Assembly (NCBI GenBank): GCA_053919585.1
Contig: CM132823.1
Reading direction: 5' to 3' (one strand)
Length of the DNA stretch: 64,000 bases
Origin: Euprymna scolopes
Taxonomy: Eukaryota
Below are positions 12,791 to 58,247 of the stretch, piece after piece (position 1 is the first letter of the stretch; each line of letters opens with the position of its first letter). Both the position numbers and the translations under genes were made by a program. The notes under the pieces were generated by a model, which saw only the letters and a program-made list of their open reading frames with translations, ran no database searches and had not been told where the DNA came from.

Positions 12791-12799
12791 AGAAAGCAG

Positions 12800-13970: not shown

Positions 13971-14441
13971 AGTCCCGATTGTGTGGGGGAAGGTCCATCC
14001 AGGTGGCGCTCCAACAATAAAATTCTAATAAAAATGAACAAGATGTTTAATCCTCATATCCTAAGATATCAGACCATGTAATTAAAATGGTCACATGCTA
14101 CATGCAGTAGTTTTTCAAGATTGCTCAAGTTTTAGGAGAGAGCTTAATATTTAGAACTGATAAACTTGAAGCCTTTGATATTTTGAAAGATGTTTGTGTA
14201 AAAGTCTTCTCAAATCATAAGCATAAAGGATTAAAATTGGGTTTTTAAAAACTATATGGAAGTGAAATTTGACAAATGAAAGTTATACTTTAATTCCATC
14301 AAGCATCATAAGTTACAGAGTCTAAACAACTAAATTAAAAGTAGTCATTTTCATGGTGGAAATAAAAAGTTTGCTACAAAGTGTGCATTAAGTTTTTATC
14401 AAACATACGGGATGTTGCAATCTGATTAGGTTTGTTTTCAG

Positions 14442-14600
14442 CCTCATCCTCCACATACTGATGGTGACCATCTTCGATTTGGAACCTATTAATGCGGTAA
14501 TTTGGCTTCAACGGACAGACAGAAACGTTCTGCATGAGAGCTCACTCAGCATCATATGCTCACCACATGGAAGTTGTGGGAGTTGAGCCCTTCACCTACC
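14442..14600 (+). pseudogene. CCCH zinc-finger exon remnant (PHPPHTDGDHLRFGTY*CGNLAS...CMRAHS..LTTWK)
   Basis: Acceptor TTTTCAG|CC. Copies at 6455-6600 and 6814-6880 (+), and at 41400-41515, 58815-58978 and 61495-61617 (-). Confidence 0.5.
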
Positions 14601-16544
14601 TTGGTTTTAATAATTCAATTTTACCTTTAAATCTGCATTAGGGTCGAGAATATGAAACTGAGAAGTGAAGACAATGAAGCTTTAGAAACTATATTCCAAA
14701 TTTTGGCAATAGAAGGTGGAGGTCTATCACGAATTCTTTGCTTACATTTTACGTAGTTTTTATAAAAATGTTATTGTCCAAACCTACCATTGCATATGTG
14801 TGCATGTATATGCATTTATGTGTACACAGTTCTTAAGTTATATATTCATAGGATTTTTTGATGTTTGGAACATTAAAGTTTCTGAATATAAGATGCTTAG
14901 AGAGTTTGTGATGACAGACGTTAGTTGTCTCGCTTTTAGGTCTTTGCCAAATTTAAGTATTTTTATTAAATATTGTTGCGAATTTATTTTCTTAAGTGGA
15001 TCTTCAAAGAAAAGACAGGTATTTATAAACTACATATTTTGACAAAGATAACTAGTAGATATTTTTTTAATTCAGTGAAATTCATGATGGGTCCCATTGA
15101 AGTCAGTGTAGACGTTTCCCCTGATATTTTCCAGTCCCTTTTACAGGCTATTTCAGATAGCTTCATATATGAAGCAGCTTCCAACGTCCACTTCCTGGAA
15201 TCAGTAGTGCCACAACTGACATGCCCATTTTTGAAAAGAGGAGATTTATTAACTGTGCCGTGTACAAAATAAAGCATGTTCTACCATTATGGCTACGAGG
15301 TGGTGCTTTTGCAGTGTACCGACAGTAAAAAGAATAAACGTGCATCAAATTAAACAGGTAAGCTATGTTCAAACTTTCCATGTTAAGTATTCGAACAAAC
15401 TATGCAACTATCGTAGGAAAAGTTCTTAGATTCACATAATTTCAGGGTTAAAACGGGTTCGTAGATTACAAACTGAATCCAAATAAATTTGGAATTTATC
15501 ACGAATGCAACTGTCCTTTTCCACATTCCCATGAGAGTTTGAAGTGTGGAAATGGATGCATACGAGTGACCGTTTTGAGGCAAAATTAGTTTACCAGTGC
15601 AGATGTGACCCAAGGCTGATAATTGAGTGGTCACATTTGGAAAAATTGAATAATTTTTTAATCAACTTGTTCAAATTTTAGGTGGAAAAATCCGGTTTGT
15701 TTGCTTACCATAAAATGACACCCATGAAGTTATTATCCAGGATCTAAACGAAAGATTAGTATAAAAAAACAAAACAAAACAAACAAAAAAAAACACGGTT
15801 TTTAAGTGAAACTTCATGTTCTGCTTAGATTGTCCAGTAAATATCGGATGCTGACAATTTTTCCTATTTTATTCAATGTTTTTTTTAGGTATTAATTTCA
15901 CTTCATAAAGAAATAAAAATATATTAAATCAAAAACTCCTGTATTTCTTTAATAGAATAAAAAAAAAATTAAAAATTGGTAAGGGCAAAAACTGATAAGT
16001 GAAATGGGATCATTTTTCAAGTATGGCGAGTCATATTGACCAACTTTGTATTTAGAATCAAATGTCAGAAATACAAAAGGGAGATAAGGCACATGGCTTA
16101 AGACATTATTTATGGTCCCTCTAGGCATCCGTCAACAGCGACATCGCTTTTTTAATAGCGCAAAGTTCCAAAAAGGCGGTCTCTTCCGCAGCTTTTGCTT
16201 AATACCCTTTATTTAAAAAATGGAATATAATATAAATATTGACAAATTCTCAGAGGAAGAATGGAAGCATCCATTGATTAGTATTTTATATAGGCAAGTA
16301 ATTTTTTGAATTTATATAAATTATATTTAGATCAAGTTAAAATTTGTTGAATTTTGTGAAATCTTTTTAAAGAATCGATTTTAAAAAATTGTATATTTGA
16401 TGAAACCTTTTATTTTAAAAGGTGGTCTTTGCTCCTTTTATTGAAAAACATTTAGGGTTTGAAGCTGTTATAAGCTTCGAAAGATAGCGAGTCTATCTAA
16501 TCAAATGTTTATCCACTACTTTGTAATGGCGACTTCTGACACTG

Positions 16545-17092
16545 CTAGCCCTTCACCTACTTCGGCTTTAATTTTTGAATATTACCTTAAAATCTGCATT
16601 AGGTTAGAATATTTTTGAAAGAGGTGATAAAGCTTTAGATACTATCTTCCAAGTTTAGAAATGGCAGGTGCAGGGGGGGGGGGTCTTCCATATCATGAGT
16701 AGTGTTTACATTGTTTTTTTTTTTTTTATATAAAAATTTTGTTCAAACCTACTATTGCTTATGTGTGCATGTACACATTTGTGTGTGCACGCACTGTTAA
16801 GTAGGATATTCGTAGCATGGATTCTTTTGATTTATGGAGCATAAATATTAAAGTATGAATAAAGTATTTTGGTGAATGTTTATGGATGAAACTAGTCATG
16901 CGAGATCAGAGTTAGTGATGCCAGACTCATCACCATCTCGCTTTTAGACCTGTGCCATTTTCTATCACATTTTAAAGTATTTTTTACGGTTAAATATTGT
17001 TGAGAATTCGTTCTGAACTTATGTTCAAAGATCAGAACAAAAAGGAAAAGACAAAGGTATTCATGATATATTTTTAACAAAGCTAACAAGTC

Positions 17093-17127
<35 letters not shown>

Positions 17128-19100
17128 CAGTGAAATTCATGATCGGTCCCATTGAAGTCAGACTGAAAACGCTTCCGATATTTTCCAACCCCTTTTACAG
17201 ACTATTTCGGATAGCTTAATGTATGACCCAGCTTACCACATCCAGTTCTGAAATTCTAATGCCACAATTGACATGCCCATTTTTGGAAAAGACGGGAGTT
17301 AGTTTGTTAACTGTGCCGTGTACAAAATAGAGTACGTTCTACCATTACGGCTAGGAGGTGGTGCTTTTGCAGTGTACAGGCAGAGGAGTAAAAAACAGGA
17401 TAAACTTGTATCAAATTAAACTAGTATTCGAGATTAAACAATCGTTAACTGTTCTACACTTTCCAAAATGGATTGCTGTCTTTCAGCTAACAATTTCCAG
17501 GGTTTAATTCGCTGCTAATTCCAAACTCCACTATCTCAGTTTCTGTAAAGCTTTTTATTCATGAGCATCCAATACGAGATGACAAGAAATCTAGTTACTT
17601 CAAGTTATTGTAATATTCGATGGCCTGTCATGGAAATAGAGGGGTAATTTTTACTCAATACGTTAACAGTACAACAGCATCGATCATGTCCAGGAACTGT
17701 ATGAAGGATCCGTGGCAGCACAAGGCAGAGATAAAAATTAAACCTCAGAAGATGCCAATTTCTTTGGAGGTAGTAGTGCAAAGGCAGACTGTTCAAATAG
17801 TAAACTACATTAATTTAGCTACTGTAGAAGTTTGCGCACACAGACTTAAAGTGGTGCCAGTAAAAGTTACCGGGTAGTTCTAATTTAAGAAAAGCATTCT
17901 AGACATTTCAAACAGTTCATCGAAGACAACTTGTTCTGTCCTGAGGTACGCTTTTCAACTTGACATTTATTGCTAACAGAAGTTCAAAGACTCAAAATGG
18001 TGGCAACAAAAGGTTGACATGTTGGCTTTGGATTTAAGGAAGCATATTCAAATTCACTTGAGAAAGCATTGCAGACCTTTCAAACATATTCTAAGGCAGA
18101 CGATTTTGTTTTACTTAGGTTCACTTTTCACCTCTAGATAATTTACACTGAAATTAAAATTATTGCTTTAATGTGTCAAATATTTTTACAGTGTTATTTC
18201 AGATAAAACTATCTTTTAAGCGAATTCACTCCCGAGTGAAATTCATTTTCAAATTATGATTCACTAATAAATTAGAGGAAGTGGGCGAAAATGGGAGGAA
18301 ACTAGTTCAAAGTGATCCAAGTGCACGAAGGAAAAAAGTGATGAGAAATACTAGATGGGCAGAGGGAACACAGGCAAATAATTGTGGCCAAAAGAGAAAT
18401 CATGTAATAAGTAGAGTGCATCTCAACTTGATGGCCAGATTATGTTCGTACATCTTTTTTGAGTGAGCGAGTCTGATATATTTTATCAAAATAACGACAC
18501 GGTATAGTATTAAAATGCGTGGAAGGTGTACATTCCCCATTCGGTCGTTTTGGTATCGTTTGGCGCGTTTTTATATAGTCGAATAGATGGAATGGTTCTG
18601 AAAACTTCGATATGGCAGAGAAACAATATGTGTGGTGGTAGTGACATTTTTAAGTGGGGCTTTTGCAGCAAATCTGAATAGCCTTTTTTCGTAGTGAAAA
18701 TTAATAGTTTGGAATATTTTAATGAGTATGAATAGATGTGATCGTTGATTTTTGGTGCGTCGTCAACAAATGTGGTATTGTTTTTGTGGATAAGGATGTC
18801 GTGAAATGGTAAAGAGTTTTTTGTACAGATTAGAAAGTGCAGAAATTTATAGTTTCTATTTTAAGCAATTTGTAGTGAAGGAACTTGCAGTGTTGCCTTG
18901 AATCAGCCAAGTTTAAAGTCAAATGAAAACATGTATCTTTGAAGTCCCTTAGAAAAGCAAAATGCATTTATGCCTTTTCATAAAGGCCGATAATTTAAAA
19001 ATGATAAGAGTCAATACGTGAATGCTTTTGCTTTCATTTGTTTTGTCATAAAATCGAGGAACCATTACAAGTATGCTCCAGGGATTCTGAAAATCAAGAA
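16545..19100. repeat. Left copy of an older inverted duplication block (mate about 38940-41410)
   Basis: Examples: 17660-17710 ACAGTACAACAGCATCGATCATGTCCAGGAACTGTATGAAGGA equals the reverse complement of 40562-40605. 17960-18300 matches the reverse complement of 39960-40310. Confidence 0.9.
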
Positions 19101-19447
19101 AAAGAGTCAATGAAATGAGAGCTTGCAATCAAAATACGAATAATCGTTGAACAGGTTTTAACCAAACATTTCTAAATTAATGAACAGATAATTATGAAAA
19201 AAATAGGGTTCCAGAGAAACTATACCATAAAAAACAATATTTAAATTTAAAAATTTAATATTAATTGCCGATACCCGTCCTAGTACAAGTATTCACATAT
19301 ATTAATTTTTTAATGATAGAAAAATTGTGCAATGCTACTTCTGTATTCAAATTCAATCATTTAATCCCAACTTTTGTAGGATCCTTCCGATTCTAATGTC
19401 CCCAGAAACCGATATAAATTTTAGTTAAATTTTTTAGAACCGCTTTA

Positions 19448-19484
<37 letters not shown>

Positions 19485-19509
19485 AGGTAAAAAAAAGTTC
19501 AAACACATG

Positions 19510-20170
19510 GATCCTTTTTCCTGTTCATTCACAATTTAAGTGAGAAAGGGATAAATAGTCGTGTCTCAAATGATGCAGAGAATTGGATAGGACAAATTAT
19601 TTAAGATTCTCAAAGTTGTAATTTAAACAAAAATGTTAGCTAAAACTAATAAACACCCTCCAATCAAAATTGACTGGCAAAGTATAATTTTTTATGTAGT
19701 GTTTATGCTAATTTCTACATTTTTAATCATTCAATATATGGTGTTTTTATTTAATTATCCAATGTTTATGCAAATTGCAGAGTGAAAGATGAACTTTTTA
19801 TCTGTATTAGGCATAATTATGAAAAACAAATGAATCCTTTCCTGTTCATTCACAATTTAAAACTTGCCAAACTAATGTCCACCTAGTGAGAAGGGGAGAT
19901 AAATAATCGTGTCAAATGATGCAGAGTATTGGACTATTTTTAAGGTTTCCAAAATTGTAATTTCAAACTTATGTTTGCTAAAACTACTAATCTACATTCT
20001 CCAATCAAAATTGACCGGCTTAGTATAATTTTTTTATGTAGTGTTTATGCTAATTTCATAATACAATTTTTTAGAATCATTCAATATGGCGTTTTTAGTT
20101 AATTACATTCTTATGCAAATTGCAGAGTAAAAGATGAACTTTTATCTGTCCATATTAGGCATAGTCATGA
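19510..20170 (+). repeat. Local tandem duplication of about 330 bp
   Basis: ATCCTTT..CCTGTTCATTCACAATTTAA...CAGAGT.AAAGATGAACTTTT...ATTAGGCATA occurs at about 19510 and 19833. Only one copy is present in the right arm (about 51135-51460). Confidence 0.8.
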
Positions 20171-21099
20171 ACATTTTGATCAAACTCGTTAAGTAGCAAA
20201 ATATAAAACAATTCTTGCAGTAGTAACATAACTGCTTTCAGTATTTGAGACTGATTTAATGTCCGTCAATAGGTATTTCAATTTAAAAAAAAACATACAT
20301 TTTAATATTGACTGTTGAATGATAAATTATCGCCATTGCTTGATAATATTTAAGTTTTCGAATGGTTCACAATAAACTAATGTTAGTTTTGGGAATTCAT
20401 AAAACGATCTTTATCTTAACGCAGCAACAATATACAACTTAACATGAATTTTTTAAAGTTAGGTCGATGGGGTTTCAATAGCAGAGTCCATTGGCCCCAG
20501 CTTTACCAGATATATTTGGCAGCAATTGTTAGGGCTGTGACGAGAATATTCTTTAAAAGCATATTCTAAAAATAAAGTTTTGTGCCGAAAATATGCTGGA
20601 ACAAATATTAGAGCATGGGTAAAATTTTTTCTCCCAGACAGATAAATTAAACTTGTTCAAACACTTAGGTGTGAATTTACAAGAGGGTATAAAATTTGGT
20701 CTGTAGTAAAGGAGTGATATAGGCAGATCACTCAACATGCCCATCGCATTGTGCTTGTAGTATTAGTTCCCAGTATGTAATTACAAAATAGACTATGCAG
20801 AAATTAGCACTCCTGATGGAAGATGGCAAGATTTGAATAGGAATTTAAAGATTACCAGTTCACTGGCGATTGCTTAACCTGCAAATGCAATATTCAGATA
20901 AGTTATAGCGCATAAGATTTGAAATAGTTGTATCAGATTAGTATTGTTATACAAATTACTGTAATTTGTATTTCGAATTGCGTAACGAAAAAACTATCCG
21001 TATAAAAATTTCGTTGAATGTTGAGATTTAATCAGCCATCTACTCGGCACGTTAATTAAAAGTTAATGCACTGAAAATATCTTAATACTTATAAATATT

Positions 21100-22350
21100 T
21101 CAGTTGTACAGATCAAAAGTTGCAAGTCTTTACTGGAGCAGCATTTAAAAACCAACATATGGCGAAAAAGACCTACATGGTAACATCAGGCACAGTTCCT
21201 ACTGCAACTGCTCGTGATTGTCAAGAAGTCAGTACAAGTAATTTGTTCAATGCTGACTTCTGCAAAGCGTCGATTGCCATGGATATCCCGTTCAATAATA
21301 TGAGCAATGACGTGTTCAGAGAATTTCTACACAAGTCCACAAGTAGAAATATTCCGGATCAGACTACCATTAGGAAATATTAGGTTATATTGGGGAAGGT
21401 TATATCAATATTCCATAAGAATCTTTCACTTAGTGATACAAGCACCAAGTGAACGTTTCAACAATTTGCCCCACTATTAGTAAAGTGAACAAAGCAAAAG
21501 TTAAGTCACCCAGAAAAAAGAAACGTGAGAATGAAACTGGGTCTCCATTGACGAAACTAATGGATGTAGAGCAGCGTTTTATTGCTTTGAGTTTGGCATT
21601 CTAAGGGTAGTGGGGAATAACGTTATTTGGGAAACCTTGCATGTCTGCCAAAGCTAAATCACTATAATTTAGGCATTTTTCAAAGATTCATTGAAGTTTT
21701 TGTGGCTGCAGCAAGCGCTTTACAGCATTGTGCTCCTCAAAAGATGCGGTTTCACTTGACAAAAGCTGTGAATGCTCTCCAAGTATTGTACCCTAAAATG
21801 ATACAAGTGCTTAGCCCAGCATACCAAAAAGTGAATAAGCTCATTTCCACAGAAGAGTAGGTTTTAAAGGCACCCAATAGAATCGACAAGTTCAGAGAAC
21901 TAGTTCCAGGGATGCCCCTTCTACCGAGGTGGGGGTACATGGCTAGAGGCAGTGCACTATTATGCTCAATATTTACATGAAATTACTGCCGTGATGTCCC
22001 TAGATTCAGAGGAACAAGGTATATCAGAGTGCCAAAAACTGTTGAATGCTGCCCTGCTTATCAGATTTATTGCAAAGTTTTTAAATGTTAAAATATTACG
22101 AAGAGACGAAATGGCCGAGTCTTAACATCTATTGGATTACTTGCCGAGGTCGAAATGACACTAGAGATGGACTTCCAATTTCGTAGAAAGCTTAGTGCTT
22201 TCAGAGAACAGTTAAGTGCCGAAGAAATAGCCAGTTTCATGTATGCTCCGGTAGTCTCCTGCAACAAGTTTTTTTTACAATATAAGACTTTTAACAGACA
22301 ACCGAAGAAGCTTTAATATTGATAATTTAATTGCAAAATGCAATGAATGA
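21100..22350 (+). pseudogene. hAT transposase pseudogene (CGGBP1/DUF659-like)
   Basis: FNADFCKASIAMDIPFNNMSNDVFREFLHKSTSRNIPDQTTIRKY; WVSIDET..DVEQRFIA; ALQVLYPKMI; LKAPNRIDKFRELVPGMPL..RWGTWLEAVHYY. Stops and frameshifts. Confidence 0.8.
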
Positions 22351-22488
22351 AGTGTTTAATTGTTCAAAGTATTTATAGTTTAAAAAAAATAGCGTTTTTC
22401 TAAATCTTGACCTATTGCATTAACCGAGTTGAACAAAATTGATAGAATTTGTAAACTACTGAATACCGTTGTAACACTTACCACAAGC

Positions 22489-25400
22489 AATAGAAAGCGT
22501 ATTGCATAAAATAGAAAGCGTATTGCATAAAATAGAAAGCGTATTGCATAAAATAGAAAGCGTATTGCATAAAATAGAAAGCGTATTGCATAAAATAGAA
22601 AGCGTATTGCATAAAATAGAAAGCGTATTGCATAAAATAGAAAGCGTATTGCATAAAATAGAAAGCGTATTGCATAAAATAGAAAGCGTATTGCATAAAA
22701 TAGAAAGCGTATTGCATAAAATAGAAAGCGTATTGCATAAAATAGAAAGCGTATTGCATAAAATAGAAAGCGTATTGCATAAAATAGAAAGCGTATTGCA
22801 TAAAATAGAAAGCGTATTGCATAAAATAGAAAGCGTATTGCATAAAATAGAAAGCGTATTGCATAAAATAGAAAGCGTATTGCATAAAATAGAAAGCGTA
22901 TTGCATAAAATAGAAAGCGTATTGCATAAAATAGAAAGCGTATTGCATAAAATAGAAAGCGTATTGCATAAAATAGAAAGCGTATTGCATAAAATAGAAA
23001 GCGTATTGCATAAAATAGAAAGCGTATTGCATAAAATAGAAAGCGTATTGCATAAAATAGAAAGCGTATTGCATAAAATAGAAAGCGTATTGCATAAAAT
23101 AGAAAGCGTATTGCATAAAATAGAAAGCGTATTGCATAAAATAGAAAGCGTATTGCATAAAATAGAAAGCGTATTGCATAAAATAGAAAGCGTATTGCAT
23201 AAAATAGAAAGCGTATTGCATAAAATAGAAAGCGTATTGCATAAAATAGAAAGCGTATTGCATAAAATAGAAAGCGTATTGCATAAAATAGAAAGCGTAT
23301 TGCATAAAATAGAAAGCGTATTGCATAAAATAGAAAGCGTATTGCATAAAATAGAAAGCGTATTGCATAAAATAGAAAGCGTATTGCATAAAATAGAAAG
23401 CGTATTGCATAAAATAGAAAGCGTATTGCATAAAATAGAAAGCGTATTGCATAAAATAGAAAGCGTATTGCATAAAATAGAAAGCGTATTGCATAAAATA
23501 GAAAGCGTATTGCATAAAATAGAAAGCGTATTGCATAAAATAGAAAGCGTATTGCATAAAATAGAAAGCGTATTGCATAAAATAGAAAGCGTATTGCATA
23601 AAATAGAAAGCGTATTGCATAAAATAGAAAGCGTATTGCATAAAATAGAAAGCGTATTGCATAAAATAGAAAGCGTATTGCATAAAATAGAAAGCGTATT
23701 GCATAAAATAGAAAGCGTATTGCATAAAATAGAAAGCGTATTGCATAAAATAGAAAGCGTATTGCATAAAATAGAAAGCGTATTGCATAAAATAGAAAGC
23801 GTATTGCATAAAATAGAAAGCGTATTGCATAAAATAGAAAGCGTATTGCATAAAATAGAAAGCGTATTGCATAAAATAGAAAGCGTATTGCATAAAATAG
23901 AAAGCGTATTGCATAAAATAGAAAGCGTATTGCATAAAATAGAAAGCGTATTGCATAAAATAGAAAGCGTATTGCATAAAATAGAAAGCGTATTGCATAA
24001 AATAGAAAGCGTATTGCATAAAATAGAAAGCGTATTGCATAAAATAGAAAGCGTATTGCATAAAATAGAAAGCGTATTGCATAAAATAGAAAGCGTATTG
24101 CATAAAATAGAAAGCGTATTGCATAAAATAGAAAGCGTATTGCATAAAATAGAAAGCGTATTGCATAAAATAGAAAGCGTATTGCATAAAATAGAAAGCG
24201 TATTGCATAAAATAGAAAGCGTATTGCATAAAATAGAAAGCGTATTGCATAAAATAGAAAGCGTATTGCATAAAATAGAAAGCGTATTGCATAAAATAGA
24301 AAGCGTATTGCATAAAATAGAAAGCGTATTGCATAAAATAGAAAGCGTATTGCATAAAATAGAAAGCGTATTGCATAAAATAGAAAGCGTATTGCATAAA
24401 ATAGAAAGCGTATTGCATAAAATAGAAAGCGTATTGCATAAAATAGAAAGCGTATTGCATAAAATAGAAAGCGTATTGCATAAAATAGAAAGCGTATTGC
24501 ATAAAATAGAAAGCGTATTGCATAAAATAGAAAGCGTATTGCATAAAATAGAAAGCGTATTGCATAAAATAGAAAGCGTATTGCATAAAATAGAAAGCGT
24601 ATTGCATAAAATAGAAAGCGTATTGCATAAAATAGAAAGCGTATTGCATAAAATAGAAAGCGTATTGCATAAAATAGAAAGCGTATTGCATAAAATAGAA
24701 AGCGTATTGCATAAAATAGAAAGCGTATTGCATAAAATAGAAAGCGTATTGCATAAAATAGAAAGCGTATTGCATAAAATAGAAAGCGTATTGCATAAAA
24801 TAGAAAGCGTATTGCATAAAATAGAAAGCGTATTGCATAAAATAGAAAGCGTATTGCATAAAATAGAAAGCGTATTGCATAAAATAGAAAGCGTATTGCA
24901 TAAAATAGAAAGCGTATTGCATAAAATAGAAAGCGTATTGCATAAAATAGAAAGCGTATTGCATAAAATAGAAAGCGTATTGCATAAAATAGAAAGCGTA
25001 TTGCATAAAATAGAAAGCGTATTGCATAAAATAGAAAGCGTATTGCATAAAATAGAAAGCGTATTGCATAAAATAGAAAGCGTATTGCATAAAATAGAAA
25101 GCGTATTGCATAAAATAGAAAGCGTATTGCATAAAATAGAAAGCGTATTGCATAAAATAGAAAGCGTATTGCATAAAATAGAAAGCGTATTGCATAAAAT
25201 AGAAAGCGTATTGCATAAAATAGAAAGCGTATTGCATAAAATAGAAAGCGTATTGCATAAAATAGAAAGCGTATTGCATAAAATAGAAAGCGTATTGCAT
25301 AAAATAGAAAGCGTATTGCATAAAATAGAAAGCGTATTGCATAAAATAGAAAGCGTATTGCATAAAATAGAAAGCGTATTGCATAAAATAGAAAGCGTAT

Positions 25401-25785
25401 TGCATAAAATAGAAAGCGTATTGCATAAAATAGAAAGCGTATTGCATAAAATAGAAAGCGTATTGCATAAAATAGAAAGCGTATTGCATAAAATAGAAAG
25501 CGTATTGCATAAAATAGAAAGCGTATTGCATAAAATAGAAAGCGTATTGCATAAAATAGAAAGCGTATTGCATAAAATAGAAAGCGTATTGCATAAAATA
25601 GAAAGCGTATTGCATAAAATAGAAAGCGTATTGCATAAAATAGAAAGCGTATTGCATAAAATAGAAAGCGTATTGCATAAAATAGAAAGCGTATTGCATA
25701 AAATAGAAAGCGTATTGCATAAAATAGAAAGCGTATTGCATAAAATAGAAAGCGTATTGCATAAAATAGAAAGCGTATTGCATAA
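22489..25785. repeat. Perfect 21-bp minisatellite (AATAGAAAGCGTATTGCATAA) x157
   Basis: 3297 bp / 21 = 157 units; no variant units seen. Confidence 0.98.
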
Positions 25786-27861
25786 AAGCAATAGAAAGCG
25801 TATTGCATAAAAGCAATAGAAAGCGTATTGCATAAAAGCAATAGAAAGCGTATTGCATAAAAGCAATAGAAAGCGTATTGCATAAAAGCAATAGAAAGCG
25901 TATTGCATAAAAGCAATAGAAAGCGTATTGCATAAAAGCAATAGAAAGCGTATTGCATAAAAGCAATAGAAAGCGTATTGCATAAAAGCAATAGAAAGCG
26001 TATTGCATAAAAGCAATAGAAAGCGTATTGCATAAAAGCAATAGAAAGCGTATTGCATAAAAGCAATAGAAAGCGTATTGCATAAAAGCAATAGAAAGCG
26101 TATTGCATAAAAGCAATAGAAAGCGTATTGCATAAAAGCAATAGAAAGCGTATTGCATAAAAGCAATAGAAAGCGTATTGCATAAAAGCAATAGAAAGCG
26201 TATTGCATAAAAGCAATAGAAAGCGTATTGCATAAAAGCAATAGAAAGCGTATTGCATAAAAGCAATAGAAAGCGTATTGCATAAAAGCAATAGAAAGCG
26301 TATTGCATAAAAGCAATAGAAAGCGTATTGCATAAAAGCAATAGAAAGCGTATTGCATAAAAGCAATAGAAAGCGTATTGCATAAAAGCAATAGAAAGCG
26401 TATTGCATAAAAGCAATAGAAAGCGTATTGCATAAAAGCAATAGAAAGCGTATTGCATAAAAGCAATAGAAAGCGTATTGCATAAAAGCAATAGAAAGCG
26501 TATTGCATAAAAGCAATAGAAAGCGTATTGCATAAAAGCAATAGAAAGCGTATTGCATAAAAGCAATAGAAAGCGTATTGCATAAAAGCAATAGAAAGCG
26601 TATTGCATAAAAGCAATAGAAAGCGTATTGCATAAAAGCAATAGAAAGCGTATTGCATAAAAGCAATAGAAAGCGTATTGCATAAAAGCAATAGAAAGCG
26701 TATTGCATAAAAGCAATAGAAAGCGTATTGCATAAAAGCAATAGAAAGCGTATTGCATAAAAGCAATAGAAAGCGTATTGCATAAAAGCAATAGAAAGCG
26801 TATTGCATAAAAGCAATAGAAAGCGTATTGCATAAAAGCAATAGAAAGCGTATTGCATAAAAGCAATAGAAAGCGTATTGCATAAAAGCAATAGAAAGCG
26901 TATTGCATAAAAGCAATAGAAAGCGTATTGCATAAAAGCAATAGAAAGCGTATTGCATAAAAGCAATAGAAAGCGTATTGCATAAAAGCAATAGAAAGCG
27001 TATTGCATAAAAGCAATAGAAAGCGTATTGCATAAAAGCAATAGAAAGCGTATTGCATAAAAGCAATAGAAAGCGTATTGCATAAAAGCAATAGAAAGCG
27101 TATTGCATAAAAGCAATAGAAAGCGTATTGCATAAAAGCAATAGAAAGCGTATTGCATAAAAGCAATAGAAAGCGTATTGCATAAAAGCAATAGAAAGCG
27201 TATTGCATAAAAGCAATAGAAAGCGTATTGCATAAAAGCAATAGAAAGCGTATTGCATAAAAGCAATAGAAAGCGTATTGCATAAAAGCAATAGAAAGCG
27301 TATTGCATAAAAGCAATAGAAAGCGTATTGCATAAAAGCAATAGAAAGCGTATTGCATAAAAGCAATAGAAAGCGTATTGCATAAAAGCAATAGAAAGCG
27401 TATTGCATAAAAGCAATAGAAAGCGTATTGCATAAAAGCAATAGAAAGCGTATTGCATAAAAGCAATAGAAAGCGTATTGCATAAAAGCAATAGAAAGCG
27501 TATTGCATAAAAGCAATAGAAAGCGTATTGCATAAAAGCAATAGAAAGCGTATTGCATAAAAGCAATAGAAAGCGTATTACATAAAAGCAATAGAAAGCG
27601 TATTACATAAAAGCAATAGAAAGCGTATTACATAAAAGCAATAGAAAGCGTATTACATAAAAGCAATAGAAAGCGTATTACATAAAAGCAATAGAAAGCG
27701 TATTACATAAAAGCAATAGAAAGCGTATTACATAAAATAAAAGCAATAGAAAACGTATTACATAAAAAAGCAATAGAAAACGTATTACATAAAATAAAAG
27801 CAATAGAAAACGTATTACATAAAATAAAAGCAATAGAAAACGTATTACATAAAATAAAAGC
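25786..27861. repeat. 25-bp minisatellite AAGCAATAGAAAGCGTATTGCATAA x71, then about 7 ATTAC-variant units and 4 ancestral-type 27-30-bp units
   Basis: G-variant 25786-27560. A-variant 27561-27740. AAAACGTATTAC units 27741-27857. Confidence 0.97.
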
Positions 27862-29679
27862 CAAAGAATAGTGTTGCTAACACAAAACTAAGTTACCAAG
27901 CATACAAATAACGTAAAACTAAGTTACAAGTATTCGCCAGAAGTACTTGGAAAATATGTGATTAAAAAATATTTGTTCCAAAGAATGCTTTTTACAAAAC
28001 ATTCCCATGAAAAGCATATTAAGCATACGGCCAAAGAATATTTTCAGCATACCACGACAATATAAAGCATATCTGTAAAAGAATATTGTCACAGCCCTAG
28101 TTATTATGAATCCATTCTTTTTAGTTCTGGAACAAAACGCATGGTTATGTTGATAGCACTTGCTATTCGCATCGGCATTCTTTAATAGGTTGGATTCACT
28201 TCATGGGACTCCACATTTCACTATGGAAAGTGAAGTTTCTTCCCTTCTTGGGTATTGTTGAACATTCAAGGGATGGCTTTCTCACTACCATTTACAGGAA
28301 GCAGACTTACCGACTTGTATGTGAACAAGTCTTTGGTAAAAAAATAAACTAGAAACGGTCAGTTTAATTTATACGTTGCTACATCGAGCCCTCATGATTT
28401 ATTCACCTAGTAGACTACACTCCGGACTATATAAAAAGCAGGGAACTATTCATTAATAACGGTTATTCAGAAGACCTTGTGAGTATTACAAAAGGTTGCA
28501 GACTTCAAATCTGCAGAAATATTTGGGCCATTAAAATGTCCCGTTTATTTAAAAACGTGGATAGGGGATAATATAAAATTCACTAGTTTGGTAGAAATAT
28601 TACTTCTATTTTCTTGCAAGTGGTATATACTACGAAACCTGCCTTTTCTTTATGCAAGGATAGTCCCCCCCTACATCCACAACAGTAATATTGTCTATCA
28701 ATTTAAATGCCAGTGTGATGCCAGTTTAAGTGGGACAGACTCTGCATTTTCAGACTCGTATAAGCCAGCACATTTCATCCAAAATTAGAAAGGGAATGGT
28801 AGGATCGGCGAATCTTCCAACTTTGGACTGCTATTGGCCAGCATTTTGCTTAAAATCCATGTGCCAATAAGCATAAAACCAGAGACTTGAGGTATTACAT
28901 AAAACAGATGTCAAAAAACATTTCGGAATCTTTCGCCATTCGAAAATCTACGTCGGCAGGAGGAGTCGATAAAAGCGTTATATCTTTGGGGAACTGATCC
29001 CCTTCATTCTGTTTTTTGTCCCTTCCACGCAGCGTCATTTTAATCGTCTTATACACGTCTATCTAATTAAATTATTTCAAGTCTTTCGGTACTTTATAAT
29101 TCTCACAGTAGTCTTATTTTCGCCAATGATACTTTCTATGTAATCGATTTCCTGACGAGATAACTGAAAGACCTATTGACAGATTTCCGCCTATCTTGCT
29201 TAAACATACCCATACAATGCATGCAGATATGTATAGACACGGTTTTGGAGTAAAGTTTAAAATATTTATGTTGGAAGATTTACTTGTCTTCGGTTACATT
29301 TGTTTTAATCATTTGCGTTTTGTTGGATCTTGTTAAAATCTAGTTTTTATCCTTTAAATTTAATTCACCTTTTATTTTTAGTTCATGTCAAAACTAAGTT
29401 CCATTAACTAAGTAGTTTTCATTAAAGTTAAATTATCGTTTGTGTTTGTGAAGGAGTGTCTTATGGGAGAAGAGAGCATTTCTTTCATTTATTTTCAGTC
29501 ACGTAAATTGTAGAGCGTTACAAATTCTCACGGATTTAAGTATTTGAAAGGAACAAGCGAAATTATAGCTTACGAATGAAGCTGTATTGTATCGACATAA
29601 AGGATCGCTTTAATTTATATTGACAAAGTTAAAGGTCATGAAATTAGTGTTCATGAAATTCGCTTTGAATTAAAAAGTC

Positions 29680-32045
29680 AATTACTTTGCTATGTTTTGT
29701 TGGATTAAAGTTAGCGCTCCTAAATAAACGTATCCAAATGAATTTCTCTTTAAGAAAACGTCCAAGCCGAAACGGGATCTTGTATTACATACCGCTACGA
29801 GAACAGGACGCCATTTCAGTTAACAGAGCTCGTTTTTTGGTAGCCTTGGCTGGCTGCTCTCAAGTTTACGATGGAATCAATTATAAATCTAATTTCATTT
29901 CGCAATTAGATTATAGAACTTTAGATGAGAATTGATTCGTATTTGAACTCTTCAGAAACACGGCAGTGGATTTCGGTAAAATTCACTTGTAAAAGTTAGT
30001 CAGAGGTCGAGTTCAATCCTCAGTACGGACGACTGAAAAAAATTTATTACTTAAAAATTCTATCCAATCATGGGTGATCGGACAGAGCATGGTAGCCATG
30101 AATTAAATAACTGGTTCCGTTTGAAATTCTATGTAGATTCGTGTTTGAGAAAATACTCCTGAAGGCCAGACTGCATAGACCGAAATTGTGTAGGGAGAGG
30201 GTAAGGGTGGTGAATACATAATCAGAACTAGTTTATGTGGAGTAAGGGTTTCCTTCAGTTTTACATATAACTTAAACCATTTTCTTTCTAAGCGGAAAAT
30301 GTAAACGCGATTTGTATCATTGATAAAGTGTGATATTGTGAATTGTTATTAATCTAAGAAAAAATACGTGCAAACAAAAACAGGATTTGTGTTTCCTACA
30401 TAATACTAAGGGAACGTAACGTCATTTCAATTAACAGGCCTCGTTTTTGCTGGCCTCGGCTGCTCTCAAGTTTACGATGGAATCAATTATGAATCTGAGA
30501 AAGAAACTTGAGAACTTACCATTTAAATTCGAAAACAATCGGCTTTGGTGTTTAGTGCATATAAATCCTGGGGTTTTATGGTATTGTTTAATCGGAACTA
30601 AAATGATCCTATTTTTCTAACACATGGCACTATTTAACATAAAAGGATACCCTGGGATTCATATTTCTTGAAGACTAATCCACTTTAAAATTGTAATTTC
30701 ATTTCGCAATTAGATTATAGAACTTTAGATGAGAATTGATTATTCGTATTTGAATTCTTCAGAAACATGGCATAGGGGATTTCGGTAAAATTCACTTGTA
30801 AAAGTTAGTCAGGTTGAGAGTTCAATCCTCAGTACGGACGACTAAAAAACAATTGCTTATTGCTTAAAAATTCTATCCAATCATGGGTGATCGGACAAAG
30901 CATGGTAGCTCCATGAATTAAATAACTGGTTCCGTTTGAAATTCTATGTAGATTCGTGTTTGAGAAAATACTCCTGAAGAAGGTCAGACTGCATAGAACG
31001 AAATTGTGTAGGGGGAAGGGTAGGGGTGGTGAATACATGATCAGAACTAAATTATCTGAATCTAGAGTAAGGTTTCCCTTCAGTTTTTACATTTTTTTTG
31101 GCGGCCGTGTATACATTTTTTCACGATAGTTTTTCACTGACCGCTTGATTACCGTTATGCAAATCCCATTTAAGAAAACGGTTTTGGTTTAAATGTAAAA
31201 GCAGTTTATATCATTTTGATAAAATGCGATATTGGCAACACAATACGAAATACGGCTGGGAAATTAAACGTGACTTCGGTTTTTCTCATGGAATATTTTT
31301 ATATCCGAAAATATAAGTTACCGTAAATATTGTGTAAAGCGGTCAAACTTATTTCTAGAAGTCAAAGGCCCAACTGAAAGGGACAAAGATAATTATAAAT
31401 AGGTTCTACGCGATACTTATTTTAGTCCCTTATAGTTTGGTATTGTGTTTAAAAAGAAAATATAAAAAAATATTACTTACCATACAATATTTAAGTCTTC
31501 ATTGAACATCAAAATGCAAACGAGTCACAAATGGGTCGATACGAAATAAATTGTTTCAGTAATTCCCAATTGTACTTCCATTAAAATTGATTGCCGCCAT
31601 TTGTAACATTTAAATTGTTAACTAAGTATCCATTTTAATTAGAATGTGGACACAAGCGTTACTCCTTTAAGTTAAATATAGTTCTTATAAAAATAGTTAA
31701 TTTTAGGTAAAGCCTAGTTTTTAGAAGTAAAGAAATACTTACCTTGTTAGTTTTTTTTTACAAAAAAAGATAAAATCTGTAACGTTTCCATGCGAGGTGT
31801 GCATCAATACGCTGGTTTTACTTAGAATCGAGGAGTGGCTCATACGGTTATTTTAAAGGACGTTCAGCTTTATAAATTTTAAAACGTAGGATGCGATCTT
31901 TTCGTGACAGTTTAAATCATGCGTTCTTTCGTCGTATCAATTTGAATTGCGGTTTTCGTTAATTATATAAGCATCTAAAAGTGAAAATCGCACTAGATAA
32001 ACCAATCAGGACGTATGTTTGAACCAACCAATGAGGAGCGCCGTA
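29680..32045 (-). pseudogene. Unidentified spliced gene remnant (promoter plus several exons), internally tandem-duplicated
   Basis: Minus-strand donors AAG|GTAAGT (about 31742), ATG|GTAAGT (about 31480, 30520) and acceptor TTCTCAG (about 30495). Conserved frame SNTNLHRISNGTSYLIHGATMLCPITHDWIEFLSNKQL. 29680-30330 is duplicated at 30350-31230. Other copies at 43750-44480 (-), 45600-48290 (+) and 37345-37750 (+). Confidence 0.45.
32001..32041 (-). promoter_or_regulatory. Tandem CCAAT boxes (NF-Y-type promoter candidate)
   Basis: ACCAATCAG...ACCAATGAG about 26 bp apart, upstream of the first donor. Both boxes are conserved at 37352-37390; one box is intact at 45607-45642. Confidence 0.35.
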
Positions 32046-32057
32046 ACATGTTTTTAA

Positions 32058-32061
<4 letters not shown>

Positions 32062-32107
<46 letters not shown>

Positions 32108-32302
32108 TATAAAATATATATGGCAATTAAGCTACACTAAACTCTAGTGGATGAAACGCGGAATATTCAGTGTAGTAATCGCCATATATATTTTATAACT
32201 TACTAACTAGCTCTACCTACGTATTGAGCACTGTTGAAGTAAATACTTAAAATTTACGCATGAATTTATACCTTCGCATATTTATGTGAGTAAATGAAGT
32301 AG

Positions 32303-32351
<49 letters not shown>
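32062..32351 (+). mobile_element. Penelope/Neptune-type pseudo-LTR fragment with inverted end, embedded in (TA)n
   Basis: (TA)n on both sides. Inverted repeat AAGTTATAAAATATATATGGC..CTACACT / AGTGTAG..GCCATATATATTTTATAACTT. Shares sequence with both ends of the PLE at 52470-53210. Confidence 0.5.
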
Positions 32352-32359
<8 letters not shown>

Positions 32360-32420
32360 CATTATTTAGAGATTTTGTACATAAGTAACTCATAAGTATA
32401 ATATATACATTAGACATATA

Positions 32421-33830
32421 CACTGCGTGTCAAATTATTAACGAGATAACATTTTTACTAGTTTCAGAAACGTACCGGTAGTTTCGTATCAAAAGCTTTG
32501 GAAACGTTAGCAATGCTGAGCTGCGCGTAGTGTGAAATTTTCGTACTGTTCCCCGCAATGTAAACAACTTACCATCGTAATTGCTGAATCCGCGATATTT
32601 GAGGTGTGTCAAGGCAATTTGTTTCGTCAGTAAAATGGGTCGTAAAGGTGGTTTGAGTAGTTCTGAGAAGAGTACTATTACAGATTAGCTAGCAAAAGGG
32701 AAAACTACCCTTCAAATATCGAAAATGATAAGAAGATACCATCAAACTGTGAAGAACCTTGTCAAGGACCCTACAAAAGTATGTAAGAGAGCTGATAAAG
32801 GTAAATCTGGAGTTGTTTCACGCCGTTCTCTACTCCAAATTAAACGTGAACTTGTTAAGAACCCTTGGCAGAAGTCGATAAGTACACATACCAGCAGGAT
32901 TAAAAAATGTCTCAAAAAGTACTCGATGTCGCCGTCTGAAAGAAGTGACAAAGTCTGTTTAGCCTGTGACAAAGCCTCCATTAAAGCAACATCACATACA
33001 AAACCGATTGTAATAGGCAGAGGACAACACGAAAACGGATTTTCCAATTTTTTTTTACGGATGAAGTGCGTGTCACTCTTGATGGCCCAGATGGCTGGTG
33101 TAAAGGATGGGTCCTAGATGGACGATATAGCCATCAGCGTTTAAGGTGCCAACAAGGTGGTGGTGGGATAATGATTTATGCTGGGATTATCGGGGGGGGT
33201 ACATTAGTTGGCCCATGGAGAGTCCCAGAAGGCGTAAAAATAACATCAAATGCTTACATAGCTTTTTTGAAGGAGCACTTTGAACCATGGCTGAAGAAAC
33301 AAAGGTTGGTGTTCAGAAGAACCATTATTTTTATGCAGGATAATGCTCCCTCGCATGCAGCAAACAAAAGCAAAGAGTATTTGCAACAACTGGGGTTCTC
33401 TGGGCTCCGGAAGATGGAGTGGCCTGCGAATTCAGATTTGAACCCAATTGAGAACCTTTGGAGTATCATGAAGCGACGCCTGTATGCAAGTGGACACCAA
33501 TTTAAGAGCAAAGATGAGTTGTGGGATGCTCTCCAAGAGGTATTGCGAGGAATAACTGTTGACGAAATCACAAATTTGACTAATTCTGTTGACCAAAGTC
33601 TTTTACAAGTCATTCATAAAAAAAGGATCGCATATCCCCTACTAATTATGTCAACGTAGAAATTGCTATGTAGTTATTGTGTTTTAAGCATTTTTCCTAG
33701 TTCATTTAATGTTTGAAATTATTTCAATAAACAAGTTATGGGTATGTTGTGTTTTTTATCAACCTCGTTAATATTCCTATCTTCTACCATAGTTTCGCTA
33801 ATACTACTTTAAATACTTTTATTTTCTGAC
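32421..33830 (+). mobile_element. Tc1/mariner element, TRT (DD37E)-like
   Basis: TA|CACTGCGTGTCAAATTATT left end followed by a transposase remnant. No complete right TIR found. Confidence 0.8.
32635..33659 (+). pseudogene. Tc1-family transposase pseudogene
   Basis: MGRKGGLSSSEK... HTH with an early stop. FTDEVRVTLDGPDGW, QQGGGGIMIYAGI, FMQDNAPSH, WPANSDLNPIENLWS. Frameshifts. Confidence 0.88.
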
Positions 33831-33857
33831 TTTTTAAAAGAATTTTTTTAATTTTTT

Positions 33858-35825
33858 TTATTACAATTTCACCCCAAACAAGGCACATTGCCACTTTGCT
33901 GTAGGGGGCTACTATCAGGGACATAAGCTACTGGGGTACTAAGTGAAGAGTTGGGCACAAGATGTCAGTTCACATTACACTTGAACTTCTGCATGTCAGT
34001 ACAGTTGGGGAAGCAGGAACTCTTAAGGGAATTCCAAAGTCCAGCAGTTCTGGGGAAGAAACTACTGGAGTAAAAGGCTCTCTTACATCTAGGGATCTCC
34101 ACTGTATAGGAGTGGGATTTTGCTGCTTGTCAGGTTTGTCGGGGATATTCATGTCGAGGGGGTACAAGTGCTTGTAGTTATCATCTGTAAGGTGATGAAC
34201 TAGAGCTTGGTTAATTATGGACTAAAATATTTTGGTGAAAAGTGGGAGGAGGCTAATGGGGTGGTAATTTACTGGGTCAGTTCTTTTGCCAGAATTCTTG
34301 AAAACTGGTACCACAGAAGCAGTTTTCCAGCAGGCAGGAAAGCAAAATTCATTAAGGCATTTGTTGTAAAGTTTGGAGAGAACCGGAGCTACTTCGGCGG
34401 AGCACTTTTTTAATAGCACAGCCGGGATGAGATCAGGTCCACATGCTTTTGAAGTGTCAAAATTTTTTATGATGGCATGCACCTGAGAAGGGGTGATTTC
34501 CAGAGTGTCTAGTGTAGCGTCTGTCTGCAAAGGAAAGTCAGGGAGGGGGTGGTTAGCAGGGTCCAGTGTGCAGTTGGAGGCAAACGGACTGGCAAGCTTG
34601 TTAGCCTTCTCGCTTGCTGAGCAAACAACCTTATGATTGTTGGATGGGGGGGGGATTGCTGATTTCCCATTATTTACAACACTGTTGTAGATTTTCCAGA
34701 AGTCACGGGTACCTAATTTCTGTTCTTAGATGCGTTTTTTGGTGGTTTCAGTACCTTCTCTCTTAGCTGTCGCTATTTCTTTCTTACAGTTATTTCTGGC
34801 TTCTATATACTTCTGTCTGTTTGAACTGAACTTATGTCGGTTAAATCTGTGGTACACATGCTGCCTTTGCGCGATTGCAGCTGCACAAGTAGAAGTAAAC
34901 CATTGGGGAGAGTGGAGCTTGCTATAAAACTTCCGCGTGGGAACATGTGCTTCAATTGTTGTTTTGAACCACTCAGTGGTCTCATGTGCGCACTGTTCAG
35001 CAGGAAGTGAAAAGATATTTTGCCATGGGGCGTCTCTGATGAGATCCCTGATGGCTTTCCAGTCAGCCTTTTTATATCTCGTTGTTTTGAGCAATGCCTC
35101 TTCTGTTTTGGCTCTAGAGTTCAGGGCGATTTCAACTATTATCACTACATGATCAGCATTTCCAAGTGGGCTGTGGGCATTCGTAACACAATCATCGGGG
35201 ACTGTGGTCAGAAACAGATCTAAAAGTGATGCATGTTGTTCTTGCTGGTCAGGGACACGGGTTGGAAACGTAGCTGTCTGTGATAGGGAGTGAGATATAG
35301 AGAAGTTGTGTGTTGTGCTACCAGCTGCGTCTGTAAGTAGAAAATCCAAGCCAGTTACTGTGGTGGACATTGAAGTCACCAAATACATGCACTTGTGCGT
35401 TAGTATCGAGTGCTGTATCTATGCTGTCAGAGACTTTATTTATTAGGGTACAGTCGAGGGAGAGGGGTAGAGAAAATAAATGCAACTAATATTATGCTTG
35501 ACCGTCCGATTCTAGTTTTGTTTCTTTAGTCAAGGGGAGGGTGTTTCGAATATAGACTCCAAGCCCGTTCATATGTCTCTCAGAGTCCTTACGGCAGAGT
35601 GGGAGATATCCGGGCATATTAAAGTAGTTAGAGGGGATGGAGGAGTGTAGGTTAGTCTCACTTAGTGCAAAGATATCCAGGGTGTTTGTTAGGAGAAATG
35701 CTTCAACATCATTTAAATTAGTTCTACGCCCACGGATGTTCGTAAATGCAAGCCTCAAGGGCAGAGACAATTTGGTTTTGTTTGAGTTTGGTACTGGAGT
35801 AGCTGAACAGTAATTGTAAGCATTT
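33858..35825 (-). mobile_element. CR1/L2-group LINE (APE endonuclease plus internally deleted RT)
   Basis: FTNIRG.RTNL..DIFALSETNL; LLDLFLTT; SPLGNADH; KACGPDLIP..PACWKTASVVPVFKNSG..NYHPISLL. A-rich 3' tail at about 33840-33860. Confidence 0.85.
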
Positions 35826-35869
35826 TCTCAAAGTTTAATAGATTTTTATTCACTCGTTCCTTAAATATT

Positions 35870-36770: not shown

Positions 36771-36965
36771 ATTTATGCCCATATAAGAGAGTTTGACATG
36801 GGTATCTAAAACGGTCCCAATTTATCAGGTTTGAAACCGACGATAGCGATAACTTATCTCATCTAAACCTTCTGTAAATAAAACGTAAATATTACGCTCT
36901 TATCTTTGGATTTTTCTTTATAAGAGAGCAGTCTGCTGGATTTTTTTTTCCAAAAACTATAACTA

Positions 36966-52030: not shown

Positions 52031-52039
52031 AAATTGACA

Positions 52040-52200
52040 TTGCTCTCAGGTCCACTCTGACCCGGAGTGGTATGTTTCTATTTAACCGATAGTTGGGACC
52101 CTGACTTGAAAAAAAACATTCTAAAACTTTTCCAAATCACTGGATTCGGCCTTAAATAACCTGAAAAGGGTTGATATGCCGTAAAACAACCAACAAAATA
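52040..52200 (+). mobile_element. SINE/LINE 3'-tail fragment (I/Nimb-type tail)
   Basis: CAGGTCCACTCTGACCCGGAGTGG...TAAATAACC..GGTTGATATGCCGTAAAACAACCAAC. A related tail lies on the minus strand at about 5200-5246. Confidence 0.4.
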
Positions 52201-58245: not shown

Positions 58246-58247
58246 TA

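What the first reader, a model, noticed from the sequence alone, without database searches (positions are those of the whole stretch)
22485..27861. Birth of a satellite caught with its single-copy progenitor in the same window
Seen: a 5.4-kb, 239-unit array sits in the 3' region of the left hAT copy. The inverted paralog has exactly one unit between the same flanks (reverse complement of 48765-48798: AAGCAATAGAAAACGTATTACATGAAATAAAAGC), a 30-bp interval bounded by AAGC direct microhomology. Inference: a microhomology-mediated duplication seeded the array after the segmental duplication, and it then amplified about 240-fold. The internal homogeneity, set against the clearly diverged flanks of the two hAT copies, implies very recent amplification. 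Transposon-derived satellites are established; having the unexpanded state alongside is unusual.
Basis: partly seen in the sequence, partly recalled or inferred. Interest (0 to 1): 0.8.

Follow-up and report, generated by a model that had tools for sequence, protein, structure and literature searches.

The report
Young minisatellite inside a dead hAT transposon
A 30-base stretch near the end of a dead jumping gene in a mollusc genome has grown, in one of two old inverted copies only, into a 5.4-kb tandem array whose unit order records how it grew; this is a clean example of a known way that tandem repeats are born.

Summary
Window 22485-27861 is AAGC followed by 239 head-to-tail units. From left to right these are 156 x 21 bp, 72 x 25 bp, 6 x 25 bp (one base different), then 30, 27, 30, 30, 30 bp. 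Every block is internally perfect. The inverted paralog carries exactly one 30-bp unit between two AAGC tetramers (48765-48798, minus strand), and the flanks align on both sides.

The host element is a dead, roughly 2.2-kb hAT-like transposon with Ac-type terminal inverted repeats. The array lies between the transposase stop and the 3' inverted repeat. Homology between the two copies continues past both inverted repeats, so the copies arose by segmental duplication (K about 0.19).

The array is far younger than that split. There are no substitutions in 5,076 bp, where about 480 would be expected. Each block differs from its neighbour by one mutation, with the progenitor-like units at the right edge.

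This fits the established model of minisatellite birth between short direct repeats, followed by slippage or unequal exchange.

Three points are overstated or untested:
- It is a single-locus minisatellite, not a shown satellite.
- An unexpanded paralog is normal for transposon-derived repeats.
- I found no independent read support and could reach no other copies of the family.

The scan had already noted the polar layering of this same stretch (s1-295732), and similar in-place satellite births on other DNA of this genome.

The parts
22485..27861 (+). Whole tandem array: AAGC plus 239 units, 5,377 bp
22485..22488 (+). Left AAGC tetramer, which is also present in the unexpanded paralog
22489..25764 (+). 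Youngest layer: 156 identical 21-bp units AATAGAAAGCGTATTGCATAA (the 25-bp unit minus 4 bp)
25765..27564 (+). 72 identical 25-bp units with TTGCAT. Each can form a 6-bp DNA hairpin, GCAATA/TATTGC.
27565..27714 (+). 6 identical 25-bp units with the older TTACAT (the 30-bp unit minus one ATAAA)
27715..27744 (+). One 30-bp unit with AAAGCG, the first A>G step
27745..27771 (+). One 27-bp unit, the only private variant (3-bp deletion)
27772..27861 (+). Oldest layer: 3 identical 30-bp units, 1 base different from the paralog's unit. It ends in AAGC (27858-27861).
48765..48798 (-). Single unexpanded unit in the inverted paralog: AAGC + 26 bp + AAGC
20530..20541 (+). 5' terminal inverted repeat of the left hAT-like element, TAGGGCTGTGAC
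28088..28099 (-). 3' terminal inverted repeat of the left element. The array ends 238 bp inside it.
21075..22316 (+). Broken transposase remnants. Relatives carry DUF659, a hAT transposase domain. The stop lies 169 bp before the array.
48530..50788 (-). Right, inverted hAT-like copy of 2,259 bp, with inverted repeats TAGGGCTATGAC and TAGGGATGTAAC
11242..36859 (+). Left arm of a large diverged inverted duplication that contains the left hAT copy
44852..61254 (-). Right arm of the inverted duplication

Best explanation
This is a single-locus minisatellite that was born and expanded in place, in the 3' subterminal non-coding part of one dead hAT-like transposon copy.

Shown:
- The two hAT copies are paralogs made by an old inverted segmental duplication.
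- The right copy keeps one 30-bp unit bounded by AAGC on both sides.
- The left copy has 239 units in five perfectly homogeneous layers, each one mutation away from its neighbour. The progenitor-like 30-bp units lie at the right edge and the most derived 21-bp units abut the left flank.

Inferred:
- Slippage or unequal exchange between the two AAGC tetramers made the first duplicate.
- Further copies were added by replication slippage or unequal sister-chromatid exchange within pure tracts.
- Two A>G changes and two small slippage deletions (ATAAA, then 4 bp) each arose once and were inherited by all later units. The unit therefore shrank from 30 to 25 to 21 bp.
- Growth was concentrated at the young, left end. 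This could be polar addition. It could also be central layering followed by one deletion that removed the left-hand older layers.

The array is very young relative to the arm split, and no function is indicated.
For: Array anatomy and perfect blocks. Exactly one unit in the paralog and none elsewhere in the window. Flanks align on both sides. Inverted repeats at 20530 and 28099, with arm homology continuing beyond both: 5' flank 88% and 3' flank 83% identical. Element divergence is K = 0.19, yet there are no substitutions in 5,076 bp where about 482 would be expected. The upper bound on block age is about 0.6% of the time since the arm split. The three oldest units are also identical to one another, where about 8.6 changes would be expected. 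Layer sizes reject uniform in-place growth (Polya-urn product about 6e-7). The Haber-Louis and Taylor-Breden birth models and polar growth are summarised in PMC3389668. Microhomology-driven origin of repeats from transposons is reviewed in PMC12628747 and PMC9659126.
Against: No independent read evidence. None of the listed runs holds the array's sampled words. The array bin had word depth 0 in the deepest DNA run, and 1.6 and 1.2 in two others. The tool warns that holes prove nothing, and short cyclic contigs may be filtered out. Only one outgroup, the paralog, was available. The 4-bp microhomology has about a 3% chance expectation and is shorter than the 5-10 bp named for the model. Perfect unit identity could partly reflect consensus polishing.
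Confidence: 0.7

Rival explanations
1. The ancestor already carried a multi-unit 30-bp array, either family-wide or at the time of the arm duplication. The right copy collapsed to one unit, and the left copy kept the array and remodelled it.
For: Collapse of short arrays to one unit by unequal exchange is easy. Only one comparison copy was available. Other family copies exist, since many contigs were 90-95% alike, but their state at this site is unknown.
Against: The oldest left units are identical to each other, although about 8.6 differences would be expected if they dated from the arm split. All 239 left units share CATA where the right copy has CATG. No trace of a second unit exists in the right copy. 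Even under this rival, the 25-bp and 21-bp blocks, 98% of the array, are left-specific and recent.
Confidence: 0.1
2. Assembly artefact. The array does not exist, or its length and perfect homogeneity are produced by the assembler or polisher.
For: No listed run holds the array's words. Word depth is zero over the first four units in the largest DNA run and low in the 84 bp before them. 156 and 72 perfect copies is the kind of result that consensus polishing favours.
Against: Assemblers do not invent ordered five-layer arrays with single-mutation steps and progenitor-like edge units. No gap or N run adjoins the array; the nearest is at 37119. Two runs show some contig coverage reaching into the array bin. 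The contigs used are short k=31 assemblies that cannot represent a 21-bp-period array.
Confidence: 0.1
3. The array is one member of a dispersed satellite carried by, or spread from, this hAT family. The 'birth' therefore did not happen at this locus, and the array arrived by conversion or transposition from an array-bearing copy.
For: Mollusc transposons, including MITEs and Helentrons, often carry internal tandem arrays (PMC3879986, PMC7492417, listed). The hAT family is multi-copy.
Against: If many copies carried 21-bp units next to this flank, the array bin should show high depth. It is 0 to 1.6. No run was listed for the array words. The left copy sits at the paralogous position with diverged flanks, so it was not newly inserted.
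Confidence: 0.05

Closest known systems
[quoted passage not shown]
   Same: The unit in the unexpanded state is bounded by a short direct repeat (AAGC ... AAGC, 30 bp apart). The array is n units plus one extra copy of that repeat. The unexpanded and expanded states are compared directly.
   Different: The direct repeat is only 4 bp, whereas the model as cited names 5-10 bp. The expansion reached 239 units with stepwise shortening of the unit.
Transposon-derived tandem repeats and satellites (Ahmed & Liang 2012, PMC3389668; reviews PMC9659126, PMC12628747; Tetris, PMC4079207; clam DTC84 MITE, PMC3879986; oyster Helentron arrays, PMC7492417)
   Same: An internal non-coding segment of a DNA transposon is tandemly amplified in place, and other copies keep the unamplified sequence.
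   Different: This is one locus in a dead copy. There is no sign that the array is carried by mobile copies or has spread, so it is a minisatellite rather than a satellite family.
Polar human minisatellites (Jeffreys et al. 1994, cited in PMC3389668)
   Same: Variant units are ordered along the array, and growth is concentrated at one end.
   Different: Polarity here is inferred from a static variant map, not from observed germline mutants. A central-layering model plus one edge deletion is not excluded.
Other in-place satellite births noted by this scan in the same genome (s1-279866, from a Gypsy integrase region; s1-268937, from a zinc-finger exon)
   Same: A tandem array is still attached to its parent sequence.
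   Different: Those are 35-98 kb arrays of 84-221-bp units. Here the array is small and the unit short, and a paralog preserves the one-unit state.

Membership tests
Transposon-derived minisatellite (post-insertion expansion of an internal segment) | Head-to-tail array of a unit lying inside the element's boundaries | tested here: met
   The array at 22485-27861 lies between the transposase stop (22314-22316) and the 3' inverted repeat (28088-28099).
Transposon-derived minisatellite (post-insertion expansion of an internal segment) | Other copies of the element carry the unit once | tested here: inconclusive
   Met for the one paralog in the window. Other genomic copies could not be fetched.
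Minisatellite birth at short flanking direct repeats (Haber-Louis / Taylor-Breden) | Short direct repeat at both ends of the unit in the unexpanded state, and an array ending in one extra copy of it | tested here: met
   AAGC lies at 48798-48795 and 48768-48765 in the paralog. The array starts and ends with AAGC. Caveats: the repeat is 4 bp only, and chance expectation is about 3%.
Satellite DNA in the strict sense | High genomic abundance, or many loci, or long arrays | tested here: inconclusive
   One 5.4-kb locus in the window. No run was listed for the array words. Depth was 0-1.6 in the array bin. k=31 contigs are poor witnesses of a 21-bp-period array.
hAT superfamily transposon | Short terminal inverted repeats of the (C/T)AG type | tested here: met
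   TAGGGCTGTGAC at 20530 and its reverse complement at 28088-28099. The right copy has TAGGGATGTAAC and TAGGGCTATGAC.
hAT superfamily transposon | 8-bp target-site duplication | tested here: inconclusive
   GCAATTGT versus GTTATTAT, 5 of 8 bases alike. The site is too decayed to judge.
hAT superfamily transposon | Transposase with the hAT-type RNase H-like core | tested here: met
   The ORF remnants match proteins (P0145, P0074, P0068) that carry DUF659 above Pfam's cut-off. DUF659 is assigned to hAT transposases in PMC3985635. The remnants themselves give no direct Pfam hit.
hAT superfamily transposon | C-terminal hAT dimerisation domain | tested here: not met
   No Pfam match for the C-terminal pieces, including a read-through with X at the stops. 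The hits also lack it. Decay or a divergent lineage may explain this.
Polar minisatellite | New units gained preferentially at one end | tested here: inconclusive
   The variant map is strictly ordered, and the layer sizes reject uniform growth. Mutation events themselves cannot be observed here.

The most novel reading that the evidence does not exclude
The array grew by error-prone addition of units at its left end only, so its unit order is a time-ordered record of growth. Four inherited mutations against a single private one across 239 units would then mean that mutations arose during the copying step itself, at roughly 2% per added unit. That points to a mutagenic repair-synthesis process rather than ordinary replication slippage. 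The A>G change that created a per-unit hairpin may have triggered the jump from 6 to 72 copies.
Probability: 0.2. Interest if true: 0.5.

Novelty: new member of a known kind. Interest (0 to 1): 0.3.

Why it matters
How a minisatellite starts is rarely visible, because the one-unit state is usually lost or unrecognisable. Here the one-unit state, the first 30-bp copies and every later variant are preserved in order at one locus. That makes it a tidy teaching case and a possible marker locus, since it is likely hypervariable between individuals. It does not change current understanding. The route is established: a short direct repeat, then duplication, then slippage-driven growth of a transposon-internal segment. 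No function is indicated.

Tried and rejected
- Direct Pfam scans of the ORF remnants and of the C-terminal piece, including a read-through with X at the stops, gave nothing. The hAT assignment therefore rests on the inverted repeats and on DUF659 in relatives.
- A PDB sequence search and an NCBIfam scan of relatives were uninformative.
- I tried four ways to fetch other copies of the family to learn the ancestral state: a word-based protein search with the C-terminal piece (no candidates), two metagenome scans with a conserved flank and with the 3' inverted repeat (none), an exact look-up of the array ORF (not on record), and earlier scan notes by sequence and words (blank).
- Reads: the look-up of sequencing runs on the 21/25-bp junction listed no run.
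- Read laying on the left flank plus four units gave no high-depth signal for the 21-bp words and no visible junction-spanning contig.
- I first read the X1 contig depths as evidence for about 20 near-identical copies. I dropped this once it was clear that the 'million letters' figure refers to contigs, so depths of 7-16 fit a single-copy locus.
- A hairpin-driven expansion idea holds only for the 25-bp TTGCAT layer. The largest layer, 21 bp, lacks the hairpin.
Full report
OBSERVATION

Tandem Repeats Finder reports a single long array at 22489-27744 (period 21, 99% matches). Splitting the sequence at each AATAGAAA gives AAGC followed by 239 units that end at 27861. From left to right the units are:
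- 156 identical 21-bp units, AATAGAAAGCGTATTGCATAA
- 72 identical 25-bp units, which are the same plus AAGC
- 6 identical 25-bp units with TTACAT instead of TTGCAT
- one 30-bp unit
- one 27-bp unit
- three identical 30-bp units, AATAGAAAACGTATTACATAAAATAAAAGC

A 19-base core pattern with up to three mismatches matches 240 times in the window, against 0.21 expected by chance. That is the 239 array units plus one place in the inverted paralog. It differs from the three right-most array units by one base. With the left copy collapsed to one unit, the two copies align through both flanks. Identity is 79% overall and about 96% in the 123 bp centred on the unit. The right copy and the left 3' flank contain no cryptic tandem repeat.

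CONTEXT

The two copies lie in a large, diverged inverted duplication, roughly 11242-36859 against 61254-44852. Its blocks are collinear and 78-97% identical.

Within the duplication I found an Ac-type terminal inverted repeat. TAGGGCTGTGAC sits at 20530-20541 and its reverse complement at 28088-28099, followed on both ends by AATATTCTTT. The right copy has the same ends at 50777-50788 and 48530-48541. The left element is therefore 7,570 bp, or 2,227 bp with a single unit. The right element is 2,259 bp.

Both copies hold broken reading frames. A search of 1.8 billion representative proteins with one 102-residue piece found 155 relatives. The longer relatives align along both copies, and several carry DUF659 above Pfam's threshold. 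DUF659 is assigned to hAT transposases by Majorek et al., PMC3985635. The remnants themselves give no Pfam hit, and no hAT dimerisation domain is detectable.

The hAT call is therefore reasonable but rests on the inverted repeats and on relatives. The array begins 169 bp after the transposase stop and ends 238 bp inside the 3' inverted repeat, which places it in the 3' subterminal non-coding region.

Homology between the arms continues outside both inverted repeats: 88% over 656 bp on the 5' side and 83% over 206 bp on the 3' side. The copies therefore arose by DNA-level segmental duplication, not by two transpositions.

DIRECTION AND TIMING

Divergence between the two elements is K = 0.19, with strong local variation of 73-96% per 200 bp. 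If the array were as old as the split, the two large blocks (5,076 bp) should carry about 480 substitutions. They carry none, which bounds the age of the blocks at about 0.6% of the time since the split. The three oldest 30-bp units are also identical to each other, where about 8.6 changes would be expected.

All 239 left units have CATA where the right copy has CATG. The layers form a strict series in which each differs from its neighbour by one event:
- 30-bp unit with AAAACG (right edge)
- A>G, giving AAAGCG
- loss of one ATAAA from a tandem ATAAA-ATAAA, giving 25 bp
- A>G, giving TTGCAT
- loss of 4 bp, giving 21 bp

The 27-bp unit is the only private variant. The progenitor-like units sit next to the right flank, and 98% of the array consists of derived units absent from the paralog. 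Expansion in the left arm after the duplication is therefore well supported, even if the ancestor had carried two or three units rather than one.

MECHANISM (INFERRED)

The unexpanded state has AAGC at both ends of a 30-bp interval, and the array is n units plus one extra AAGC. This is the signature expected from slippage or unequal exchange between short non-contiguous direct repeats. Those are the models of Haber & Louis and of Taylor & Breden, as summarised in PMC3389668. A microhomology of 4 bp or more occurs at about 3% of random breakpoints at lag 30 in this window, so this is consistent but only moderately strong evidence.

Later growth by small-step slippage or unequal sister-chromatid exchange inside pure tracts would explain why no two variants are interleaved.

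Under uniform in-place duplication, the older layers should have kept growing. The observed shares of the younger clade at successive steps are 0.983, 0.996, 0.974 and 0.684. Their joint probability is about 6e-7 under the most favourable Polya-urn assumption. A crude simulation gave a perfectly one-sided order in about 4% of runs, so it is the layer sizes, more than the order, that reject uniform growth.

Growth was therefore concentrated in the youngest layers. Two readings fit:
- Units were added at the left end, as in the polarity known from human minisatellites.
- Each new variant arose and expanded inside the youngest block, and one later deletion removed the left-hand older layers.

The A>G change to TTGCAT creates a 6-bp hairpin in every 25-bp unit, at -3.4 kcal/mol per unit and z = -2.75. 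The older units do not fold, and the 21-bp units lose the hairpin. This coincides with the rise from 6 to 72 copies but cannot explain the largest block.

INDEPENDENT DATA

Eight runs hold words of the left flank. They include DNA runs of the same organism (X1, X7), DNA of a second organism (X6) and RNA libraries. For the 21/25-bp junction stretch, none was listed.

I laid Logan contigs of X1, X7, X6 and X2 on 20053-22572, which is the flank plus four units. Contigs identical or nearly identical to the left copy appeared at word depth about 7-16, along with many contigs 90-95% alike, so the family is multi-copy. The 84 bp before the array had depth about 3. The array bin had depth 0 (X1), 1.6 (X7), 0 (X6) and 1.2 (X2).

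This gives no support for the array. It also argues against many copies carrying 21-bp units next to this flank. It does not refute the array, for three reasons:
- The contigs are short k=31 assemblies that cover only half of the locus.
- A 21-bp-period array collapses to a tiny cycle at that word length.
- The tool itself warns that holes prove nothing.

The array may also be polymorphic. Other copies of the family could not be reached.

COMPARISON WITH WHAT IS KNOWN

Tandem repeats derived from transposon-internal segments are common. At least 23% of human minisatellites and satellites derive from transposons, and 300 of these are flanked by direct repeats of 5-20 bp (PMC3389668). Reviews list origins from central parts and ends of DNA transposons and discuss microhomology-mediated mechanisms (PMC12628747; PMC9659126). 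The satellitome model places a de novo duplication at a single site as the birth step (PMC4935994).

For transposon-derived repeats, an unexpanded paralog is the rule rather than the exception. The same scan has already noted the polar layering of this very stretch (s1-295732). It has also noted several other arrays still attached to their parent sequence elsewhere in this mollusc genome.

VERDICT

This is a real-looking, very young, single-locus minisatellite that fits a known origin model unusually cleanly. It is a new member of a known kind. The 'satellite' label and the claim of rarity are overstated. Confirmation by spanning reads and a survey of the family's other copies are still missing.

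Noticed in passing
window 21391-21453: A piece of about 57 bp inside the dead transposase region has enormous word depth in all runs: 88,094 in X1 against about 7-16 for neighbouring contigs, 6,483 in the second organism and 12,059 in an RNA library. The unmatched contig ends just before it end in ...TAGTGGGGC and those just after it end in ...CTGCCCCACTA, which are inverted with respect to each other. A very abundant MITE-like element therefore seems to share this piece.
   Followed up: partly
window 25765-27564: Each 25-bp TTGCAT unit can form a 6-bp DNA hairpin (GCAATA/TATTGC, -3.4 kcal/mol per unit, z = -2.75) that was created by a single A>G change. The ancestral 30-bp and 25-bp units do not fold, and the 21-bp units lose the hairpin.
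   Followed up: partly
window 11242-36859 vs 44852-61254: A large inverted duplication of about 25 kb per arm, with an 8-kb spacer that holds the N run at 37119-37344. Identity is very uneven: 95-97% at 11369-15166, 78-87% elsewhere, and 73-96% per 200 bp inside the hAT. This suggests patchy arm-to-arm gene conversion or nested elements of different ages.
   Followed up: partly
window 28327-29754: About 1.4 kb is present in the left arm only, directly after the shared 3' flank of the hAT. It is either an insertion in the left arm or a deletion in the right arm.
   Followed up: no
window 33066-33659 and 55706-56125: Other transposon remnants: a DDE_3 (Tc1/mariner-type) ORF on the plus strand and a reverse-transcriptase fragment on the minus strand. 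The window is rich in transposons and no host gene was seen.
   Followed up: partly
window 20053-22488: RNA libraries X2-X5 hold 18-24% of the words of the dead hAT. X2, the one RNA library laid on the stretch, gives contigs along it at low depth. This could be transposon transcription or DNA carry-over, and the tool does not count it as shown transcription.
   Followed up: no
window 27886-27930: In the left copy only, AAAACTAAGTTAC occurs twice, 31 bp apart, where the right copy has it once. This is a second small local duplication in the same 3' subterminal region, but it falls below the Tandem Repeats Finder threshold.
   Followed up: partly
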